From positions 1 through 64,000 of the IMG/VR virus record IMGVR_UViG_3300013233_000093: 64,000 bases of DNA; one strand, written 5' to 3'. Below are positions 1-60,494 of this stretch, piece by piece. A program made the position numbers and the translations under genes. Below the pieces are notes generated by a model that saw only the letters and a list, made by a program, of their open reading frames with translations, did not search any database and was not told the origin of the DNA. Numbering within the stretch: position 1 is the first letter of the stretch; every line of letters starts with the position of its first letter.

Positions 1-281
1 CCTGTGGGTGCCGGAGGCACCGGAGATGCTATCAGTGGCGACAGCGAAGCTGGGTCGCCCTGACGGATGTCAGATAACCCAACACGTGGACTCGCTGGCG
101 CTCCCCCACCTGTGGGTGGAGCCGCATCACCTGTGGGTGCCGGAGGCACCGGAGATGCTATCAGTGGCGACAGCGAAGCTGGGTCGCCCTGACGGATGTC
201 AGATAACCCAACACGTGGACTCGCTGGCGCTCCCCCACCTGTGGGTGGGGACACATCACCTGTGGGTGCCGGAGGCACCGG
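1..281. repeat. Tandem 129-bp (43-codon) Pro/Gly/Ala-rich repeat inside the tape-measure gene
   Basis: cctgtgggtgccggaggcaccgg recurs at 1, 130 and 259; first two units nearly identical. Confidence 0.95.
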
Positions 282-36764: not shown

Positions 36765-38366
36765 TTACTTCCTTTGTTCTGACGCACTGACCGCTCTTAC
36801 TATACCCGCCGCCAGACTAATATACGCGGTGGACGCTGTAAGATACTCCTTCAAAATAATACTTACAAACTTTAACGCCTTGGACATGTTTTTATACTCG
36901 TTGCCCATAGACGCCACAATAGAATTAATATATTTCGAATGAGGCTCGTCACGGTACTTTCCAGTGATACCGTCAAACGTCTTTAATCCGTCCTTTATGT
37001 CCTGAAGCTTCGCTCTTTGCGCCGGTCTAAACAGCTTAGCGGTGTCGGCTGCGCGCATGTGCATTTCATACATAGCCTTAGTGGCTGTGTTAAAGTCTAC
37101 AATGTCTATATACTCTAACACGGTTGGCTGTGATGGTTTGGTGACCGACAACGTAAAACTGGGCATGCCGAGATCGTCGGTACTTATTGTAATCTCAAAA
37201 ACCCGCCCGCCGCCTGTGTCTGGAGATATTAAACTTCCAGATGCGTCATCTGGATCAAGATCGGTAATGCCGTCGTATAACCCAAGCATCGCCTGTAAGT
37301 ACCCATGAGGCATATTAAAGATTTCGTACACCCACTCAGCGTTATTCAGTAACGCGCGTACCAACCGGCGCCTATCACGCATTGCGTGTGAGTCCTCGTC
37401 GTGTAGACCCGGTAAACTCGTGTTCATTGTCTCGAACAATTCCAAGATTTCGTCGATGGACACGGGCTCTATTTTCTTTATGGCGGTGTTTATATTATCA
37501 ATAACATCGCTCATTTTAGACCGATCCATGCCACCGCTGATGATGATTGCATGGTCCTCTATCATATCGACGTCTTCCACGTAGGCTTTGCGGATGTCAT
37601 TGGTGATCTTTATACGAGTGAACCCACTACGTTGCTTACGCAGTTCTTTAATCCTTGCCTCGTCCCTTGCAGCAGCCTGCGCTGCTGCTTCCTTATCGGC
37701 CGCTGCGATGCGCGCGGCTTCCTTTTTATTAGCGGCTTCTTGCTCGACGGTTGCGTTAAACCTTGCTGCGGCGGCGTCTAACCTTTCGCGTTCGCGCTTG
37801 TTGAATTCCTCCGCTTCTTCGACGTCCTTCTTTATTTTAGATAGCCGTGCATCATCTCGAGTATTATTCTCAAGACGCGCTGCTTCTAACATCTCAGGAG
37901 TGACTTCGCTTACTGCCTTTTCTATATCCACGCCTTTCTCTTCTAGCTCTGCTACGGCTAAAGCAGTCTCTACGGTGGCCTTATCTTCCTTGGCCATTTC
38001 CTTACCGATCACGCCTCCCACAGGAGTGGGTGTATCCTGATAAGTAGCGCCAGGAGTATCAGGGTTAGTACTACCCTTACCTCCGGTAAGCCACTCCCAT
38101 AGCTTTTTAAGACCGCTTACCACCGCCATGACTGCACGGACGATCAAACGCCAAACAGCTTTAAAAGCACGTCCTATAAACTGCATACCAGCTACAGTGT
38201 CTGCGCCTATGGAGTCGCCAGACACCCACTCCACTCTATCACCACACATACCCATCATACCAGCAATAGTATCAGACTCCTCATAGATCTTAATAACACG
38301 ACCACTAAGCACCCCATCCAACACCAACTCAGCATACTCCAACTCACTCACCACACGACTATCCAT
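36765..38366 (-). CDS. Putative internal head (ejection) protein with propeptide and coiled coil
   Basis: Acidic N-terminus, then amphipathic AFKAVWRLIVRAV...KKLWEWL typical of phiKZ-family inner head proteins; A/E/K/R-rich coiled coil. Confidence 0.6.
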   Translation of the reverse strand: MDSRVVSELEYAELVLDGVLSGRVIKIYEESDTIAGMMGMCGDRVEWVSGDSIGADTVAGMQFIGRAFKAVWRLIVRAVMAVVSGLKKLWEWLTGGKGSTNPDTPGATYQDTPTPVGGVIGKEMAKEDKATVETALAVAELEEKGVDIEKAVSEVTPEMLEAARLENNTRDDARLSKIKKDVEEAEEFNKRERERLDAAAARFNATVEQEAANKKEAARIAAADKEAAAQAAARDEARIKELRKQRSGFTRIKITNDIRKAYVEDVDMIEDHAIIISGGMDRSKMSDVIDNINTAIKKIEPVSIDEILELFETMNTSLPGLHDEDSHAMRDRRRLVRALLNNAEWVYEIFNMPHGYLQAMLGLYDGITDLDPDDASGSLISPDTGGGRVFEITISTDDLGMPSFTLSVTKPSQPTVLEYIDIVDFNTATKAMYEMHMRAADTAKLFRPAQRAKLQDIKDGLKTFDGITGKYRDEPHSKYINSIVASMGNEYKNMSKALKFVSIILKEYLTASTAYISLAAGIVRAVSASEQRK

Positions 38367-38383
38367 TACTGTTCTCCAGGTTT

Positions 38384-39092: not shown

Positions 39093-40991
39093 TTAATCGT
39101 CATCATCGTCCCATTCCAAACCAGCGTTGGATTGGTATTCAGTCACACGGGTTTCAAAGAAATTTTTTTCTTTCTTTAAAAGTGCCTGTTCGTCTAACCA
39201 TTCACATGCATTCGTTGCACCAGGAAAGGGTTCTTCCAAATGCAATGCACGTGCTCTTCGATTGGCCATGTAGTGGAACTGTGCAATGTGTTGATCCTTG
39301 GTGTAACCCAACATCGGTTTCTTAAGGATGTACCCAGCGTAATCACGTTCTACTTGTTCTGCCTCATCCCACATATCGCGGACTTCCTGTGGATCTAGAA
39401 CCACACCTTCTTCTTTGATGATCTGGTTTGCTACACGGATACCGAACGAAGCATGCATGACTTCATCCCGCATAATGTATTGCAACTGCTCACCAGTACC
39501 TTTCATAAGACCTCTACGCTGCAATGCGAAGATCGGAGTGAAACCGTTATAGAACCAACATCCCTCGAAGATGGCTGCGAAGAAGATGTACGACATGACA
39601 AACTCACGCAGGTGATCTGGATTGGTTAAGTCCAGTGTTTTAGACATGGAAGCTGCAAGTCGTTTTTCTGCCATCCGGATCTTAGCGTTGATCTCAGGCA
39701 CCACCAGATAACGATTATAGATCTCATCCTGATCTAACCCAATGGTCTCAATGCAATGTTGGTACGTCCATGTGTTACCGGACACAACCACTTTGCCGTC
39801 AAGACGAGTGATGATCACTCGGGAAGGTACACCTACGCTGTAGACATTACCATTGTACGCTTCTAGTGATTTCTGCAGCCGCAAGCCATTCACGCACGTG
39901 CGATGTTCAAAATGCACAGACGTGCCGTTCGGACGATCGTCTACATGCATGACAGTACCACACAGTGGTGCTAACGCACTGAAGGTTTCCTGCACACGTT
40001 TAAAGTCCCCGTACAGCACCCGACCCCAAGTCGTTAGTTCAGATAAAAGCTCCGTGCACTGACTGTAGTTTAAGGCAGGCAGGTACGCGCGCTCCAGCGA
40101 TTCCAACACGCATTGTAAAATCGTTGCGAAGTTTACAATTTTAAACCATGCACTGTTGGCATCGTCGCAGCCCATCTCATATTCGATATCACTCGTCTTA
40201 CAAAGCCACACCAATCTACTGATGGATCTTGGTTCGTGAAGAATCACATCGTGACCTTCAATGCTGGTGACGTGCGCTAGCGTGGCCACGGTCAGTCTCG
40301 TTTCGTTGTCGAGACTTACCCTGCGATTGTTGTTAAACGTTCTGGCACTGACGGGGAACCCGTGCTTTCCAAGCTCCAACTCGCCCGCTTTAGCAAGCGT
40401 CAGTTCAGTATCGTCAAAGTCGAAGTACGCACAGTTATGATTCGGAGTGACCTTAGTGAGATAATTGTCACCCGTGATGACTACAAGATTGCCCTCGTAG
40501 TGATCTTTGGTGACACCAAGATGGTTCACAAACGTGACTTTCCCGTTAGCATTAAAGTCCGCTACGGTATCAGTATCCGCAAGGTCTCTAAAGTCCACCC
40601 AACCACGACCGGTCAAGACTTCTGTGCCTTCCACGTAACAATGCAATGCTTCTTCGAACACCTGACGTGCTTGGTAAAGTTGCAGCTCCGGTGCAGTCAT
40701 GCGCTCCATGACGGCTAAACCGATGTTACGCATTGCCATAATGTCAGATGTAGTGAGGTACGCTAAGACGTTTTCGTACACATGACGCTCATTGTCGCTC
40801 AGTTTATGCCGAAAGTCATGCACGTCCTGCGTCATGTTCACGTCTAACGGCACCCAGTGGTTCTTATTGGCGTTGGTAAAATACGTAAACGCCCATGGAT
40901 ACTTGAAGGGCGCTAACTGGTTTATATTACCCTTGCCGTTTACAACTCTCTTGTCGGATGCACGTACACCCGATTTCTTTTCTTCGCTCAT
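39093..40991 (-). CDS. nrdB: Ribonucleotide reductase class I beta subunit (intein-containing)
   Basis: PFKYPWA, NHWVP, EEALH, EGCWFYNGF, YIMRDEVMH, KEKNFFETRVTEYQ; 343 aa after removing intein. Confidence 0.95.
   Translation of the reverse strand: MSEEKKSGVRASDKRVVNGKGNINQLAPFKYPWAFTYFTNANKNHWVPLDVNMTQDVHDFRHKLSDNERHVYENVLAYLTTSDIMAMRNIGLAVMERMTAPELQLYQARQVFEEALHCYVEGTEVLTGRGWVDFRDLADTDTVADFNANGKVTFVNHLGVTKDHYEGNLVVITGDNYLTKVTPNHNCAYFDFDDTELTLAKAGELELGKHGFPVSARTFNNNRRVSLDNETRLTVATLAHVTSIEGHDVILHEPRSISRLVWLCKTSDIEYEMGCDDANSAWFKIVNFATILQCVLESLERAYLPALNYSQCTELLSELTTWGRVLYGDFKRVQETFSALAPLCGTVMHVDDRPNGTSVHFEHRTCVNGLRLQKSLEAYNGNVYSVGVPSRVIITRLDGKVVVSGNTWTYQHCIETIGLDQDEIYNRYLVVPEINAKIRMAEKRLAASMSKTLDLTNPDHLREFVMSYIFFAAIFEGCWFYNGFTPIFALQRRGLMKGTGEQLQYIMRDEVMHASFGIRVANQIIKEEGVVLDPQEVRDMWDEAEQVERDYAGYILKKPMLGYTKDQHIAQFHYMANRRARALHLEEPFPGATNACEWLDEQALLKKEKNFFETRVTEYQSNAGLEWDDDDD
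39774..40640 (-). mobile_element. Intein (289 aa) in nrdB
   Basis: Begins CYVEGTEVLT...GW, has VTPNH block B, ends VYSVGVPS...VVVSGN before +1 Thr; interrupts EEALH|TWTY. Confidence 0.92.
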
Positions 40992-55235: not shown

Positions 55236-55278
55236 TTCAAAACTATATCACTATTATGATGGACAACGTGTTGTTGTC
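55236..55278 (+). promoter_or_regulatory. Early promoter + stem-loop cassette
   Basis: Consensus; 55227-55287 identical to 58489-58549. Confidence 0.85.
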
Positions 55279-56214: not shown

Positions 56215-56346
56215 ATGCAATACATTAATTGGTTATTGATGGTAATCCCGGCACTACTGACTCCACTGGCTGCTATAGCTGGTGTATGGATCGCGGTGGT
56301 TTGTCCAATCAGAGTGAGTAAAGATTGCCTACGTAAGGAGGGTTAA
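56215..56346 (+). CDS. 43-aa single-TM peptide
   Basis: AGGAG RBS; MQYINWLLMVIPALLTPLAAIAGVWIAVVCPIRVSKDCLRKEG. Confidence 0.55.
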   Translation: MQYINWLLMVIPALLTPLAAIAGVWIAVVCPIRVSKDCLRKEG

Positions 56347-56348
56347 TT

Positions 56349-56540
56349 GTGATATTTTATCACTACGCAAGTGAGCAGTATCCAGAGTTATTATCCAAGC
56401 AGGCACAGGGCGGCCCGACGAACGCAGATTTAAAAGAGTAAATTCGAATGTCTGTGTTTAGAGGTTATCCCGCATCGTATGAGAAACACATATCCCTGTT
56501 TATAGAACCACCTCCCTTTAAAGAGTTACCGAGTATATAA
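56349..56540 (+). pseudogene. Probable pseudogene with in-frame TAA
   Basis: AAGGAGG RBS; MIFYHYASEQYPELLSKQAQG...LKE*IRMSVFRGYPASYEKHISLFIEPPP...; stop at 56439. Confidence 0.55.
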
Positions 56541-56620: not shown

Positions 56621-57136
56621 ATGACAGCCATAATCGCGTCGTACAAAGATGGTTATTACCATCTCACAGCCGACACTTGTGTTTCCATGACCGGGTATGT
56701 TAGTACTTGGACAAAGGTATTTAGTACGCAGTACGCCGCAGTAGCGATCTCTGGTAGTGCAGGGATTTGCACACGCGTTGCAACGCGCGCACTGGCCGCG
56801 CACGACGGTTCTGATATCGAGGCACTGCTTGCGGACTTACAGAAACGCGCCGGTATATACCATGACAGCAAAACGGAGGTTTACCTCACAGTCATCCACG
56901 CTACCGGGATTTACGCAATAAGTACGTCAGATACCCGCGCTTACGGCGACATAACGTTCACCGCCGGAAGCGGTGCGGATGCAGTTCTTGTAGCGTTAAC
57001 CGCAGCTAGTCGTCTTGGCAAGTTCAAAACGGAATTAGAGCGCCACGCGTTTGCAATGAAGCAGGCTGCACGCTGGGAACCCAGCGTTAATGCTAAAGTA
57101 GATCAGGTATCCATCAAAGCAGGAGACGCAGTATGA
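56621..57136 (+). CDS. Proteasome-beta/HslV-like Ntn hydrolase (N-terminal Thr)
   Basis: M-T start, LTADT, TKVF, AISGSAG, AGSGA: canonical Thr1/Asp17/Lys33/GSG pattern. Confidence 0.75.
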   Translation: MTAIIASYKDGYYHLTADTCVSMTGYVSTWTKVFSTQYAAVAISGSAGICTRVATRALAAHDGSDIEALLADLQKRAGIYHDSKTEVYLTVIHATGIYAISTSDTRAYGDITFTAGSGADAVLVALTAASRLGKFKTELERHAFAMKQAARWEPSVNAKVDQVSIKAGDAV

Positions 57137-57651
57137 TTTTCACTCACAACGACGGCAAATCTTTGTTGGTCTACGCGAATGAATATAATTCCGTGGAGCT
57201 TATTGAGCCAGATGACTACTCGATCCACGAGGCAGATAATGCGTCGATTACGTCGGGCTACACTAACTCATTTACGGCGTTGGTAAAACGTCATATGACG
57301 GATAAATACGCCAGCCAGCCATGCGCATACACAGCAGCCATGGTGTTCAAAGATGAGTTAATTGCAATAGCCAAGCACTATGAATTAGACATTACCAAGA
57401 TGTCACACTTCGTAGTTAGATTGGGTAATGAGATGGTGCAGATTGCAGACACCGACATTTACATTGACGACTCAGAAGTCAGCACGTTGAACTGTTCAAC
57501 TGCATTGGTGTATCTTACATCGATCAAAGATCTTATCCCTGGTATAACAAAGGCACGTACGCGTAAGCTTATGCTGGAGCATCTTGAAAACGATCTCCCG
57601 CAGACAAACCCGCCGTTCATAAAGGTGTTTAAGTTTAAGAAAGGCAGGTAA
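57133..57651 (+). CDS. Hypothetical protein, probable inactive Ntn-fold paralog
   Basis: ATGA overlap; same length and collinear similarity to upstream gene; lacks Thr1. Confidence 0.55.
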   Translation: MIFTHNDGKSLLVYANEYNSVELIEPDDYSIHEADNASITSGYTNSFTALVKRHMTDKYASQPCAYTAAMVFKDELIAIAKHYELDITKMSHFVVRLGNEMVQIADTDIYIDDSEVSTLNCSTALVYLTSIKDLIPGITKARTRKLMLEHLENDLPQTNPPFIKVFKFKKGR

Positions 57652-57655
57652 GCGC

Positions 57656-57704
57656 ATATCACCTAGGCCATACGGCCTAGGTGATATATGTGGTCTTTTC
57701 TTTT
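57656..57704. terminator. Terminator between convergent genes
   Basis: ATATCACCTAGGCC-ATAC-GGCCTAGGTGATAT with T-rich tail. Confidence 0.8.
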
Positions 57705-58447
57705 TATCTGGAAATCCGTAATCCGGTTAGAGCGTAATGCTGATCTTTATTAGCCATGATGGTGATCTTTCTCCATCGTTTTAAATGAGTCGTCCGTAGC
57801 AACTCAAAGGAGTCTGAGTAAGAATCTATAATCTCCCGCTTTTTGCCAGAACTCGCCCCGCCGTTCATGTACATGTACGTACTGTTTAGACTGAGTTCTT
57901 TATGAATAAACCCTTTCTCCGCTAACACGGCCATATCACCATAAAGTAACTTAGTGGAGTTTGCCATATTACGCATCTCGGCGTCATTCTCCATGCGACA
58001 TCTTAACCCGATGTGGATATAAGGTATACGCTTTGGACTGGCAATGGTGTTCGGTACCGGCATATACACTGCAGTAGAGCCTTGGTAGTTAGGACTGCCG
58101 CTGACCATACCACCTGTGTTTCCACCGTACTCAGAGGAGTAACCATACTCCAGTGTAAAGACTTCGGTAATGTCTCTGCCCTGTCTAATACGAGGTGGTA
58201 TGAAGATAGCAGTCCCCGTTTGAAACTCTCGTCTAGGTAGTCCTGTAATGTCCAGCGTTTCCACATCGCCAGAAGCGATGTTTAAATCCGGTGTAAGGAT
58301 GCCGTTAATCGTATCTCGGATAATACGACTTTCCAGACTGCTGTAGTCAAACCCTGTGCCTTCAGATGCAGTATGTGCATCCGCTAACAGTTCCTTTGGT
58401 ATCTCTTGATAAATTCGATTAAGTGCATAGTCAATATGAGTGCCCAT
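57704..58447 (-). CDS. Conserved phiKZ-family protein usually found near phuZ
   Basis: IDYALNRIYQEIPKELL...SLESRI...DLNIASG, LRCRMEND, REIIDSYSD. Confidence 0.65.
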   Translation of the reverse strand: MGTHIDYALNRIYQEIPKELLADAHTASEGTGFDYSSLESRIIRDTINGILTPDLNIASGDVETLDITGLPRREFQTGTAIFIPPRIRQGRDITEVFTLEYGYSSEYGGNTGGMVSGSPNYQGSTAVYMPVPNTIASPKRIPYIHIGLRCRMENDAEMRNMANSTKLLYGDMAVLAEKGFIHKELSLNSTYMYMNGGASSGKKREIIDSYSDSFELLRTTHLKRWRKITIMANKDQHYALTGLRISR

Positions 58448-59444: not shown

Positions 59445-60494
59445 ATGAGCAAGAAACAAAATCTGGCATCCGTGTACTTCTTTGGCGGCACTGGTACTAA
59501 CCTGGCAATCTCTTCAAACGTCCCCACGTTTGAAGAATCCGACGGTGCATTTGCCAACTTCAACAAGGTGATTGTGGACACCTCCCGTGCCAACATCCAA
59601 GGGCATGAGGAAGAGTTGGAGCAACGAGGCGTAGCGGTTCACGTTATTCCTGGTCTGGACGGATGTGGTAAAAGTCATAAGACTGCTGCGCAGCACACTG
59701 CCCCGCACATCAAGGGTATCTTGAATGATTACAAGCCAAGTGAGGTTAACATCTTAGTGGCGAGTGCAGCAGGCGCGTCTGGACCAGTGCTACTGCGACA
59801 GGTCGTGGGTGAAATCGCAAGTCGTGGTAAAGCTCTGGCCGTTATCCTGGTAGCCAACGTCACCAGTTCACTGGAAGCGGCAAACACAATGTCCACGATT
59901 CAAGGCATTCAACGCACCGCAGAGAAGTACGGCTGCACCATTCCCATCAGCTATTGGCAGAACGCAGCGGCAGCTGATGCAGATAAACCATGGCTGGGTA
60001 CTTTCACCTCAAACAACACCAACATCGACAAGGCATTACGGGCGATGGCGGTGTTTACTTCAGGCACAGTTGCCCATATGGATAGCGAGGATGTTATCAA
60101 CACCTTGGATATCCGTCGGACTAATAAGCGCATTACCGCTCAGGCAGTGGAGCTTATCATCCGACCCTCTAAAGACGAGGCGTTGGACGCGTATATTGGT
60201 AAAACACTTACCTCTGCATCATGCATGCGGAACGTGGATGACCTGCAACCTGCGCTGCGCGCACTGTACGAGTCCGTGGGTTACTATGCTAAAGGTATTC
60301 ACTTCAACTCAGACGAAGCGGATGAGGGCATGCCTGACTTAACCATGATTACCACGCCAGCTAACCTGCCTGTGATCATGGCGGATTTGGAAGAGGAGCG
60401 CAAGATCTTCAAGGGCATCGAGGAATCGCTATCCGGCAATGGAGCGATTACCACTTCTCTGGATGATGACGATGACGATCTCGGCATCGATTAA
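59445..60494 (+). CDS. phuZ: Tubulin-like spindle protein PhuZ
   Basis: FGGTGTNL, VDTSRAN, LDGCGK, SAAGASG, HMDSED, acidic C-terminal tail DDDDDDLGID. Confidence 0.9.
   Translation: MSKKQNLASVYFFGGTGTNLAISSNVPTFEESDGAFANFNKVIVDTSRANIQGHEEELEQRGVAVHVIPGLDGCGKSHKTAAQHTAPHIKGILNDYKPSEVNILVASAAGASGPVLLRQVVGEIASRGKALAVILVANVTSSLEAANTMSTIQGIQRTAEKYGCTIPISYWQNAAAADADKPWLGTFTSNNTNIDKALRAMAVFTSGTVAHMDSEDVINTLDIRRTNKRITAQAVELIIRPSKDEALDAYIGKTLTSASCMRNVDDLQPALRALYESVGYYAKGIHFNSDEADEGMPDLTMITTPANLPVIMADLEEERKIFKGIEESLSGNGAITTSLDDDDDDLGID

What the first reader, a model, noticed from the sequence alone, without database searches (positions are those of the whole stretch)
56621..57651. Coupled active + dead proteasome/HslV-fold gene pair: possible phage hetero-oligomeric protease
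Seen: 56621 (171 aa) has the Ntn-protease pattern (Thr after Met, AD, K, SG, GSG). The next ORF overlaps it by ATGA, is 172 aa and looks collinear by eye: SYKDGYYHLTAD vs THNDGKSLLVYAN; AVAISGS vs ASITSGY; YLTVIHATGIYAISTSD vs HFVVRLGNEMVQIADTD; AMKQAARWEPSVNAKV vs MLEHLENDLPQTNPPF. It lacks Thr1 and GSG. Known: 20S proteasomes pair active beta with inactive alpha paralogs, while HslV, Anbu and BPH are homo-oligomers. Inference: an early two-subunit proteasome-like machine, with no HslU partner in this window, possibly degrading host defence proteins.
Basis: partly seen in the sequence, partly recalled or inferred. Interest (0 to 1): 0.8.

Follow-up and report, generated by a model that had tools for sequence, protein, structure and literature searches.

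The report
Phage HslV-like protease plus orphan neighbour
A giant nucleus-forming phage from a microbial mat encodes a very divergent but apparently active relative of the bacterial HslV/proteasome protease. The gene coupled to it is an orphan of unknown fold, so the proposed active-plus-dead two-subunit phage proteasome is not shown.

Summary
Both ORFs exist as described: 56621-57136 (171 aa) and 57133-57651 (172 aa), overlapping in ATGA. Both score as coding, and they share a transcription unit that ends in a strong hairpin.

ORF1 is a proteasome/HslV-fold protein.
- The ESM Atlas holds a confident model (pTM 0.87) that superposes on an HslV cluster over 168 residues (TM 0.80).
- Thr, Asp, Lys and Gly-Ser-Gly align with HslV Thr1, Asp17, Lys33 and GSG.
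- A collinear alignment test places it with four other HslV-like proteins, above all 50 decoys.
- No HMMER method finds a relative: Pfam, NCBIfam, and phmmer against 1.84 billion representatives.

ORF2 is a complete orphan. It shows no proteasome signal in Pfam, PHROGs, NCBIfam, BLASTP, hhalign, ESM features (best score 0.46) or the ESM model (pTM 0.21). It has no collinear similarity to the four other HslV-like proteins. Its similarity to ORF1 is marginal: z 2.3-3.2, reached by 2-3 of 97 decoys, and gone with PAM250.

Phage proteasome homologues are already known (PPH, AAH, jumbo-phage "HslV family" genes). In Machinavirus and Derbicusvirus such a gene is also followed at once by a conserved ~182-aa partner. 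That partner is not detectably related to ORF2.

Verdict: ORF1 is a new member of a known kind. The hetero-oligomer idea is unproven (about 0.15).

The parts
56621..57136 (+). ORF1, 171 aa: divergent HslV/proteasome-beta-like Ntn threonine peptidase. It has no propeptide; Met-Thr gives Thr1 once the initiator Met is removed.
   Evidence: ORF and sequence. ESM Atlas: model pTM 0.87, TM 0.80 over 168 residues to an HslV cluster, and feature score 0.96 to viral clusters that carry PF00227. Collinear global-alignment sum z of 12.0 against four HslV-like references, with decoy maximum 6.8. Ranks first of 232 sequences with an E. coli HslV + pSal ORF1 HMM, E 0.047. Coding score 0.16 in its own frame.
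56624..56626 (+). Codon for Thr2, the predicted Thr1 nucleophile after Met removal.
   Evidence: Aligned with Thr1 of E. coli HslV and of four phage HslV-like proteins.
56672..56674 (+). Codon for Asp18, equivalent to proteasome/HslV Asp17.
   Evidence: The Asp column is invariant in the alignments. The catalytic triad is as defined in PMC8665760.
56714..56716 (+). Codon for Lys32, equivalent to Lys33. The S2-S3 segment is two residues shorter than in HslV.
   Evidence: In the six-sequence alignment it shares a column with the Lys of E. coli HslV, pSal ORF1 and Derbicus gp123. Pairwise MAFFT places it a few residues off, so the equivalence is inferred.
56966..56974 (+). Codons for Gly116-Ser117-Gly118, the conserved GSG loop of proteasome-like proteins.
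   Evidence: Aligned with GSG of E. coli HslV, pSal ORF1 and pSal ORF116, and with GTG of Derbicus gp123.
57121..57125 (+). Shine-Dalgarno AGGAG for ORF2, inside the end of ORF1 and 7 nt before the ATG.
   Evidence: Read directly from the sequence.
57133..57651 (+). ORF2, 172 aa: an orphan protein of unknown fold, translationally coupled to ORF1 through the ATGA overlap. It has no Thr1 and no GSG.
   Evidence: ORF. Coding score 0.24 in its own frame. No significant family hit. Only itself found among 5.8 billion proteins. ESM model pTM 0.21 and best feature score 0.46. The identical protein occurs in a second sample.
57656..57687 (.). 14-bp perfect hairpin followed by a T-rich run. It is a likely bidirectional terminator between ORF2 and the convergent DUF7484 gene (57704-58447, - strand).
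   Evidence: RNA fold of -27.6 kcal/mol, z -5.5, with 0 of 200 shuffles as stable.
55239..55258 (+). Nearest upstream copy of a phage-specific promoter-like motif. It is the probable start of the unit: 283-aa ORF, three micro-ORFs, ORF1, ORF2.
   Evidence: Ten copies in the window where 0 are expected, all on the + strand and all upstream of genes. None lies between 55301 and 56621. That this is one transcription unit is inferred, not shown.

Best explanation
ORF1 is a highly divergent phage member of the proteasome-like (HslV/20S-beta) Ntn-hydrolase family.

Proposed mechanism for ORF1 (inferred from the family):
- Removal of the initiator Met exposes Thr1, which acts as nucleophile together with Asp17, Lys31/33 and the GSG loop.
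- Like HslV, the protein most likely assembles into stacked homo-oligomeric rings that enclose the active sites. It would cleave unfolded polypeptides.
- The substrates would be delivered by an unfoldase that is not encoded next to it. This could be the host's HslU or a phage ATPase in the unexamined part of the genome.

ORF2 is a real, co-transcribed and translationally coupled gene. Its product is an orphan of unknown fold and is not demonstrably related to ORF1. The most likely reading is a non-catalytic accessory protein made in step with the protease, such as a regulator, adaptor, cap or inhibitor. This is by analogy with the conserved ~182-aa gene that directly follows the HslV-like gene in Machinavirus and Derbicusvirus jumbo phages.

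Shown: the gene structure, the coupling signals, the predicted ORF1 fold and its conserved catalytic residues.
Inferred: activity, oligomeric state, dependence on an unfoldase, and any ORF1-ORF2 contact.
For: ORF1 fold and residues:
- ESM Atlas model pTM 0.87, TM 0.80 over 168 of 171 residues to an HslV cluster. 59 of the 100 best feature hits carry PF00227, with scores of 0.96.
- Thr, Asp, Lys and GSG align with HslV.
- Strict global-alignment z of 3.8, 4.1, 1.9 and 2.2 against E. coli HslV, pSal ORF1, Derbicus gp123 and pSal ORF116. The sum is 12.0, against a decoy mean of 1.2, sd 2.5 and maximum 6.8.
- Top rank in a small HMM search.

Gene pair:
- ATGA overlap and AGGAG 7 nt upstream of ORF2.
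- Both ORFs score as coding, and a strong terminator follows ORF2.

Analogy in other jumbo phages:
- pSal-SNUABM-04 ORF116/117 overlap by 4 bp. Phobos and Derbicus gp123/124 are 2 nt apart.
- The partners are homologous across the two genera at about 20% identity: BLASTP E 7.6e-5 and global z 10.5.

Published context: phage proteasome homologues PPH and AAH (PMC8665760), and HslV-like ORFs in a jumbo phage (PMC7823757).
Against: - No HMM recognises ORF1: Pfam PF00227 and NCBIfam gave no hit even at E 10. phmmer against PDB gave only an off-register HslV hit at E 0.11.
- The fold call rests on one language-model prediction plus weak alignment statistics. AlphaFold2 on the single sequence failed (pLDDT 35).
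- No unfoldase gene was found in the window or in 65 kb more of the genome.
- Nothing shows that ORF1 and ORF2 interact. Tight spacing and 4-bp overlaps are common between unrelated phage genes.
- ORF2 is not related to the Machinavirus/Derbicusvirus partner family.
- No transcript data exist.
Confidence: 0.55

Rival explanations
1. ORF2 is a degenerate, catalytically dead tandem duplicate of ORF1 with the same proteasome fold. The two assemble into a hetero-oligomeric particle, either alpha/beta-like stacked rings or mixed rings.
For: - Nearly equal lengths (171 and 172 aa), ATGA coupling and a strong ribosome-binding site.
- ORF1-ORF2 global alignment z of 2.9 (BLOSUM62) and 3.2 (BLOSUM45). 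This is higher than ORF1 scores against two genuine phage HslV-like proteins (1.8-2.2), and only 2-3 of 97 decoys reach it.
- The low-confidence AlphaFold2 model of ORF2 has the element order strand-strand-strand, helix-helix, strand-strand-strand, helix. That order is compatible with the fold.
- Its N-terminus reads as a beta-hairpin with a DG turn, like HslV strands S1-S2.
Against: - The ESM Atlas folds the equally orphan ORF1 confidently but not ORF2 (pTM 0.21, pLDDT 0.32). The best feature score is 0.46, and no proteasome family appears among 100 hits.
- Collinear z against four other HslV-like proteins is 0.16-0.82. The sum of 1.67 is reached by 19 of 50 decoys.
- hhalign probabilities are 0.1-0.4, and the HMM ranks are unremarkable.
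- The ORF1-ORF2 signal disappears with PAM250 and needs two long gaps.
- An end-gap-free test gave a high summed score, but the underlying alignments are in mutually inconsistent registers.
- The analogous partner family in other jumbo phages shows no proteasome features.
Confidence: 0.15
2. ORF2 has nothing to do with the protease. It is one more fast-evolving accessory gene that happens to share an operon and a 4-bp overlap with ORF1.
For: - The region between DHFR and PhuZ is filled with orphan ORFs that match no family: the 283-aa ORF, the micro-ORFs and the 228-aa ORF.
- The syntenic regions of the nearest phages, BONAISHI and pPa_SNUABM_DT01, hold different small ORFs and no HslV-like gene. 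So this is a variable accessory region.
- ORF2 has no relatives and therefore no co-occurrence record.
Against: The coupling with its own strong ribosome-binding site suggests co-ordinated synthesis. A dedicated downstream partner is conserved with the HslV-like gene across two other jumbo-phage genera despite about 80% sequence divergence.
Confidence: 0.25
3. ORF1 has the proteasome-like fold but is not a compartmentalised protease. It would act as a monomeric or small-oligomer enzyme with another Ntn chemistry, for example a specific ligase or transpeptidase like archaeal connectase, or a processing peptidase for one phage or host protein.
For: The family includes non-protease and non-ring members (PMC8665760). 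No unfoldase was found near ORF1.
Against: ORF1 keeps all four flanking-helix regions and HslV's length. It superposes on HslV over 168 residues, whereas connectase lacks H1-H2.
Confidence: 0.05

Closest known systems
Bacterial HslV (ClpQ), the peptidase of the HslVU protease
   Same: - Predicted fold: TM 0.80 over 168 residues.
- Length: 171 against 176 aa.
- Met-Thr start with no propeptide.
- Thr1, Asp17, Lys33 and GSG in the aligned positions.
   Different: - No HMMER-level similarity: PF00227 and the NCBIfam models gave no hit.
- About 23% identity to E. coli HslV in the MAFFT alignment.
- The segment between Asp17 and the Lys is two residues shorter.
- No adjacent hslU.
- It is encoded by a phage.
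Phage proteasome homologues PPH, AAH and CPH (Fuchs, Alva and Lupas 2021, PMC8665760)
   Same: These are group I proteasome-like proteins encoded by tailed phages, with the conserved Thr/Asp/Lys centre.
   Different: PPH is about 140 residues and lacks helix H2, whereas ORF1 is HslV-sized. I held no sequences of these families, so assignment to one of them was not tested.
HslV-like genes of Erwinia/Salmonella jumbo phages: Machinavirus pSal-SNUABM-04 ORF116 and ORF1, and Derbicusvirus gp123 'peptidase HslV family'
   Same: - They occur in jumbo phages, have a Met-Thr-Thr start, and conserve Asp, Lys and G(S/T)G.
- They are 157-175 aa.
- They are followed at once by a ~182-aa gene of unknown function: a 4-bp overlap in Machinavirus and 2 nt apart in Derbicusvirus.
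   Different: - No BLAST-level similarity to ORF1. Global z is only 1.9-2.2 for ORF116 and gp123, and 4.1 for pSal ORF1.
- Their partner family is unrelated to ORF2.
- Those phages carry an HslU/Clp-type AAA_2 ATPase gene about 2 kb downstream. None was found here.
20S proteasome alpha/beta pair (archaea, actinobacteria)
   Same: It has an active beta-type subunit plus a second subunit without Thr1.
   Different: Alpha subunits are recognisable homologues with an N-terminal helix extension. ORF2 shows no recognisable homology or fold. No heteromer has been shown.
BPH and Anbu (bacterial homo-oligomeric proteasome homologues)
   Same: They are single-gene proteasome-like proteins that work without an adjacent AAA+ partner gene (PMC8665760).
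   Different: The best structural match of ORF1 is to HslV, not to these. Membership was not tested.

Membership tests
Proteasome-like family (Ntn clan; HslV, 20S beta, BPH, PPH ...) - ORF1 | Alpha-beta-beta-alpha sandwich with the S1-S11 core and flanking helices H1-H4 | tested here: met
   The ESM Atlas model has pTM 0.87 and TM 0.80/0.79 to an HslV cluster over 168 residues. This is a prediction only. The AlphaFold2 single-sequence model failed.
Proteasome-like family - ORF1 | N-terminal nucleophile Thr1 (or Ser1) exposed in the mature protein | tested here: met
   The sequence starts Met-Thr. Removal of Met before Thr follows the known specificity of methionine aminopeptidase (general knowledge).
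Proteasome-like family - ORF1 | Asp17 and Lys33 of the catalytic triad | tested here: met
   Asp18 (precursor numbering) lies in an invariant column. Lys32 shares the Lys column in the six-sequence alignment. The Lys equivalence needs a 2-residue deletion and is inferred.
Proteasome-like family - ORF1 | Oxyanion-hole Gly47 (Gly45 in HslV) | tested here: inconclusive
   The segment Ser44-Gly45-Ser46-Ala47-Gly48 lies where HslV has Ala-Gly-Phe-Ala-Gly-Gly. The exact equivalent residue cannot be fixed without a structural alignment.
Proteasome-like family - ORF1 | Match to the family's sequence models (Pfam PF00227, NCBIfam HslV) | tested here: not met
   No hit even at E 10. phmmer against PDB gave HslV at E 0.11, off register. 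Annotated phage HslV-like proteins also fail this test, so it is not decisive.
HslVU system - ORF1 | Partner HslU AAA+ unfoldase encoded alongside | tested here: not met
   None of the 16 window ORFs of 300 aa or more that were scanned (the other, PhuZ, was identified through PHROGs) has an AAA_2 or Clp-type domain. No Walker-A unfoldase candidate appears in 65 kb more of the same genome. About 94 kb of the genome was not examined.
HslVU system - ORF1 | Dodecamer of two hexameric rings, activated by HslU C-termini | not testable with these tools
   No multimer prediction was available.
Proteasome-like family - ORF2 | Proteasome/Ntn fold | tested here: inconclusive
   ESM model pTM 0.21 and no structural match above TM 0.35. 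AlphaFold2 pLDDT 38, and Foldseek found nothing. The same AlphaFold2 and Foldseek route also failed for ORF1, so that part has no power.
Proteasome-like family - ORF2 | Detectable homology to ORF1 or to other family members | tested here: not met
   - BLASTP E 0.074; hhalign probability 0.4 or less.
- No family hits.
- ESM features 0.46.
- Sum z of 1.67 against four references, at decoy level.
- Only a marginal z of 2.3-3.2 to ORF1.
Two-subunit (alpha/beta-type) proteasome | The two genes co-occur across genomes | not testable with these tools
   Neither protein has any relative in 5.8 billion clusters, 1.84 billion representatives, IMG/VR or GenBank phages. The only other occurrence is the same phage in a second sample.
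Two-subunit (alpha/beta-type) proteasome | The two subunits assemble into one particle | not testable with these tools
   This needs multimer modelling or experiment.

The most novel reading that the evidence does not exclude
ORF2 is a tandem duplicate of ORF1 that has degenerated beyond recognition and lost Thr1. The two form a hetero-oligomeric phage proteasome-like particle that works without a dedicated AAA+ partner. This would be an independent, viral re-invention of the active/inactive subunit pairing otherwise known only from 20S proteasomes.
Probability: 0.12. Interest if true: 0.8.

Novelty: new member of a known kind. Interest (0 to 1): 0.35.

Why it matters
Phage-encoded proteasome homologues are known from sequence surveys, but none of the papers I found and read reports biochemical characterisation of one.

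ORF1 is an extreme case. It keeps the fold and the catalytic residues while losing all HMM-detectable similarity. It sits in a deep-branching nucleus-forming jumbo phage, and no unfoldase gene was found in the 58% of the genome examined.

Two results would be worth having:
- If ORF1 is active, it would show how far the family can drift. It would also offer a small, propeptide-free Thr protease for study.
- If ORF2, or the conserved partner in Machinavirus and Derbicusvirus, binds the protease, that would define a new class of accessory factor for HslV-like enzymes.

The more exciting claim of an alpha/beta-like two-subunit phage proteasome would bear on how hetero-oligomeric proteasomes arise. 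The present evidence does not support it beyond a marginal alignment score.

Tried and rejected
Searches that found nothing or were uninformative:
1. DNA and tblastn searches of GenBank phages with both ORFs found nothing, even at E 10, apart from noise for ORF2.
2. The word-index search of 5.8 billion proteins returned only the proteins themselves.
3. Exhaustive phmmer of ORF1 returned two NHL-repeat proteins, which are spurious hits.
4. IMG/VR scans with ORF1 and with the DUF7484 neighbour returned only the window's own contig.
5. NCBIfam and PADLOC gave no significant hit for ORF1, ORF2 or their neighbours.

Structure prediction:
6. AlphaFold2 on single sequences gave pLDDT 38 for ORF2 and 35 for ORF1. 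Foldseek on both models gave noise. Because the positive control failed, this route says nothing about ORF2.

Comparisons with other phages:
7. Synteny with the nearest phages, BONAISHI and pPa_SNUABM_DT01, shows different small ORFs and no HslV-like gene at the equivalent place.
8. RAY gp116, cited as 'HslVU family', is an HslU-like ATPase. The two 179-aa ORFs after it resemble nothing here.
A Derbicus-type member of the same partner family, returned by the third protein search, gave no proteasome features.

Local statistics:
10. hhalign and small HMMs built from the few available sequences had too little power. Even the phage HslV-like family against E. coli HslV scored a probability of only 1.5.
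11. An end-gap-free alignment test ranked ORF2 above all 104 decoys. I reject it as evidence because the alignments behind it are in inconsistent registers: the ORF2 N-terminus aligns with the HslV C-terminal half. The strict global test removed the signal.
12. Hydropathy-profile correlation did not even separate true family members from decoys.

Other leads:
13. The 20-mer promoter motif also hit five other IMG/VR contigs. These are one unrelated 30%-GC locus seen five times, not relatives.
14. No RNA run was listed as holding the locus, and laying reads gave only small DNA contigs.
Full report
**What is in the sequence.** ORF2's ATG overlaps ORF1's TGA, giving ATGA. An AGGAG lies 7 nt upstream of that ATG, and GAAGGA precedes ORF1.

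Both ORFs score as coding. A codon-usage model was trained on eleven family-identified genes of the window. Each ORF scores positive only in its own frame (0.16 and 0.24 per codon, against -0.3 to -0.4 in the other sense frames).

A perfect 14-bp hairpin follows ORF2 at 57656-57687 (-27.6 kcal/mol, z -5.5), with a T-rich run after it. It sits between ORF2 and the convergent DUF7484 gene.

Upstream, the 468 bases after the 283-aa ORF hold three micro-ORFs (43, 30 and 30 aa). The nearest copy of a phage-specific promoter-like motif is at 55239. The pair is therefore probably the end of a longer transcription unit. That is an inference.

**The genome.** The window belongs to a 222,906-bp contig (IMGVR_UViG_3300013233_000093) from a microbial-mat metagenome.

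It is a phiKZ-like, nucleus-forming jumbo phage. It carries:
- PhuZ tubulin at 59445-60494;
- phiKZ-type sheath, tube and vertex proteins;
- ribonucleotide reductase, thymidylate synthase and DHFR.

It is far from any isolate. PhuZ is 24-28% identical to its best matches, and the DUF7484 protein is at most 33% identical to its best match.

**ORF1.** No sequence method finds a relative.
- Pfam, PHROGs, NCBIfam and PADLOC give no hit for ORF1 beyond an insignificant MCM_C match at E 0.23.
- tblastn against 50,697 phage records gives nothing, even at E 10.
- The 5.8-billion-cluster search returns only the protein itself.
- Exhaustive phmmer against 1.84 billion representatives returns only itself plus two spurious NHL-repeat proteins.

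Even so, the ESM Atlas holds a confident model of this exact protein (pTM 0.87). It superposes on a bacterial HslV cluster with TM 0.80 over 168 residues. 59 of its 100 nearest clusters by language-model features carry PF00227. The top ones are viral, with scores of 0.96.

The catalytic residues sit where they should when ORF1 is aligned with E. coli HslV and four phage HslV-like proteins. The family's defining residues are taken from PMC8665760.
- Met-Thr at the start.
- Asp18.
- Lys32, which needs a two-residue deletion to match Lys33.
- Gly116-Ser117-Gly118.

I added an independent check, a strict full-length global alignment with shuffle z-scores. ORF1 scores 3.8, 4.1, 1.9 and 2.2 against E. 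coli HslV, pSal-SNUABM-04 ORF1, Derbicus gp123 and pSal ORF116. The sum is 12.0. Fifty unrelated phage ORFs of 150-200 aa average 1.2 (sd 2.5, maximum 6.8).

An HMM built from E. coli HslV plus pSal ORF1 also ranks ORF1 first of 232 sequences (E 0.047).

I therefore accept ORF1 as a proteasome/HslV-fold protein with an intact active site. It is probably an active threonine peptidase. Activity and ring assembly are inferred from the family.

**ORF2.** It is also an orphan. The identical protein occurs on a 1-kb contig from a second sample. That contig differs from the window by one base, which lies in ORF1. It is the same phage and gives no evolutionary information.

Every test for a proteasome relationship was negative or powerless:
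- Pfam, PHROGs and NCBIfam gave only insignificant unrelated hits.
- BLASTP against ORF1 gave E 0.074 for an off-register stretch.
- hhalign probabilities were 0.4 or lower.
- The ESM model has pTM 0.21, no structural match exceeds TM 0.35, and the best feature score is 0.46 with no proteasome family.
- Strict global z against the four other HslV-like proteins is 0.16-0.82. The sum of 1.67 is reached by 19 of 50 decoys.

The single positive sign is the ORF1-ORF2 global alignment.
- z is 2.9 with BLOSUM62 and 3.2 or 2.3 with BLOSUM45. That is reached by 2-3 of 97 decoys.
- z is 0.7 with PAM250.

A looser test with free end gaps looked striking: ORF2 ranked above all 104 decoys. Its alignments are mutually inconsistent in register, so I discount it.

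AlphaFold2 without an alignment failed for ORF2 (pLDDT 38). It also failed for ORF1 (pLDDT 35), and Foldseek found nothing for either model. That failure therefore carries no weight. The secondary-structure order in the weak ORF2 model is compatible with the fold but is not diagnostic.

The asymmetry in ESM is real evidence against paralogy, but it is not conclusive. ESM folds the equally orphan ORF1 confidently and does not fold ORF2.

**Comparison with other jumbo phages.** Phage proteasome homologues are already described.
- PPH, AAH and CPH are reported in PMC8665760.
- HslV-like ORFs are reported in Salmonella phage pSal-SNUABM-04 (PMC7823757).
- Derbicusvirus records annotate a 'peptidase HslV family' gene.

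- In Machinavirus, the HslV-like gene (175 aa) overlaps by 4 bp a 182-188-aa gene of unknown function.
- In Derbicusvirus, the HslV-like gene (167 aa) is followed after 2 nt by a 182-aa gene.
- The HslV-like genes of the two genera are homologous (BLASTP E about 1e-10, z 16).
- So are the downstream partners, at about 20% identity (E 7.6e-5, z 10.5).
- A profile search found only nine clusters of this partner family, none with a Pfam domain.

A dedicated partner gene therefore travels with the HslV-like gene in that lineage. This makes a functional link between ORF1 and ORF2 more plausible by analogy.

The analogy has limits.
- The partner family is not related to ORF2.
- It is not detectably similar to its own HslV-like neighbour.
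- It shows no proteasome features in the ESM Atlas. The best score is 0.78, to periplasmic-binding-protein-like clusters, and recognition is low.
- Those phages also carry an HslU/Clp-type AAA_2 ATPase about 2 kb downstream.

Here I found no such ATPase among the window's large ORFs. I also found none in a further 65 kb of the same genome, recovered through the promoter motif. About 94 kb remain unseen.

**Most likely mechanism.** ORF1 loses its initiator Met and exposes Thr1. It assembles like HslV into stacked rings and cleaves unfolded polypeptides. An unfoldase encoded elsewhere, either host HslU or a phage ATPase, would supply the substrates. Alternatively it may act as a low-activity, ungated peptidase.

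ORF2 is made in step with ORF1 through translational coupling. It most likely acts as a non-catalytic accessory or regulator. The steps shown are the gene structure, the coupling signals, the predicted fold and the catalytic residues. Everything about assembly, activity, partners and substrates is inferred.

The rivals are:
- ORF2 as a mere neighbour (about 0.25);
- a non-protease Ntn function for ORF1 (about 0.05).

**Novelty and score.** ORF1 is a new and unusually divergent member of a known kind, the phage-encoded proteasome/HslV homologues. The claim that would make this exciting is an alpha/beta-style two-subunit phage proteasome. It is neither excluded nor supported beyond a roughly 1-in-40 alignment score. 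Interest 0.35. If the hetero-oligomer were true, 0.8, at a probability of about 0.12.

Noticed in passing
window 19638, 33905, 34638, 38388, 43708, 48905, 51288, 55239, 58501, 59319 (+ strand); also L025-L043: A 25-30-nt motif (core AAAACTATATCACTATTATG, usually preceded by ATTC) occurs 10 times in the window where 0 are expected, nine of them exact. There are 24 exact copies across the 222,906-bp genome. All copies are on the + strand in intergenic gaps, typically 40-110 nt before a start codon. Most are followed at once by a short conserved hairpin (GGACAACGTGTTGTTGTC or ATAACG...GTTAT). It looks like a phage-specific promoter with a 5'-leader stem-loop.
   Followed up: partly
L010:18181-19253, L012/L013:2650-3704, L017:5477-10186: In Machinavirus and Derbicusvirus jumbo phages the HslV-like gene is always followed at once by a conserved ~182-aa gene of unknown function. 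The partners are homologous between the two genera at about 20% identity. An AAA_2 (HslU/Clp-type) ATPase gene lies about 2 kb downstream. The pSal-SNUABM-04 paper says no HslU is present, but ORF121, annotated as 'DnaA', corresponds by position and size to the 581-aa PF07724 (AAA_2) protein of Huxley.
   Followed up: partly
L002:6353-9164 (Erwinia phage RAY gp116-gp118): RAY gp116, reported as nuclear-localised and of the 'HslVU family', is an HslU-like AAA+ ATPase. It is followed by two adjacent 179-aa ORFs with no family hit and no detectable similarity to HslV-like proteins or to each other.
   Followed up: partly
window 56215-56540: The apparent 468-bp gap before ORF1 holds three small + strand ORFs in series. 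One is a 43-aa hydrophobic, probably membrane, peptide (56215-56346) preceded by AGGAG. The other two are 30-aa ORFs (56349-56441, preceded by AAGGAGG, and 56448-56540).
   Followed up: no
window 39093-40991 (- strand): The ribonucleotide reductase small-subunit ORF is 632 aa, about twice the usual length. Pfam Ribonuc_red_sm matches it in two stretches, the best covering residues 409-591. This suggests an insertion such as an intein, or a fused N-terminal domain.
   Followed up: no
window 37590-38381 vs L031:905-1681 and L034:6423-6802: Part of the 533-aa ORF at 36765-38366 (- strand) has 85-86% identical DNA copies elsewhere in the same genome. This points to a multi-copy paralogue family. 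The neighbouring 529-aa ORF may be a further member.
   Followed up: no
L040:9630-9868 vs window 1-239: A stretch from elsewhere on the same contig ends in 239 bases identical to the start of the window. Window coordinates equal contig coordinates. This is consistent with terminal redundancy, meaning a circularly assembled and probably complete genome.
   Followed up: no
L024, L029, L032, L039, L042: Five other IMG/VR contigs, up to 253,879 bp and about 30% GC, contain the exact 20-mer of the promoter motif. All five share one identical local context and have no protein similarity to this phage. They are one unrelated locus seen five times, not relatives.
   Followed up: yes
L004 (JGI sample 3300023313) vs window 56893-57957: The same phage occurs in a second metagenome sample. 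There is one difference in 1,065 bases, C to A, which changes Leu to Ile at residue 132 of ORF1. ORF2 is identical.
   Followed up: yes
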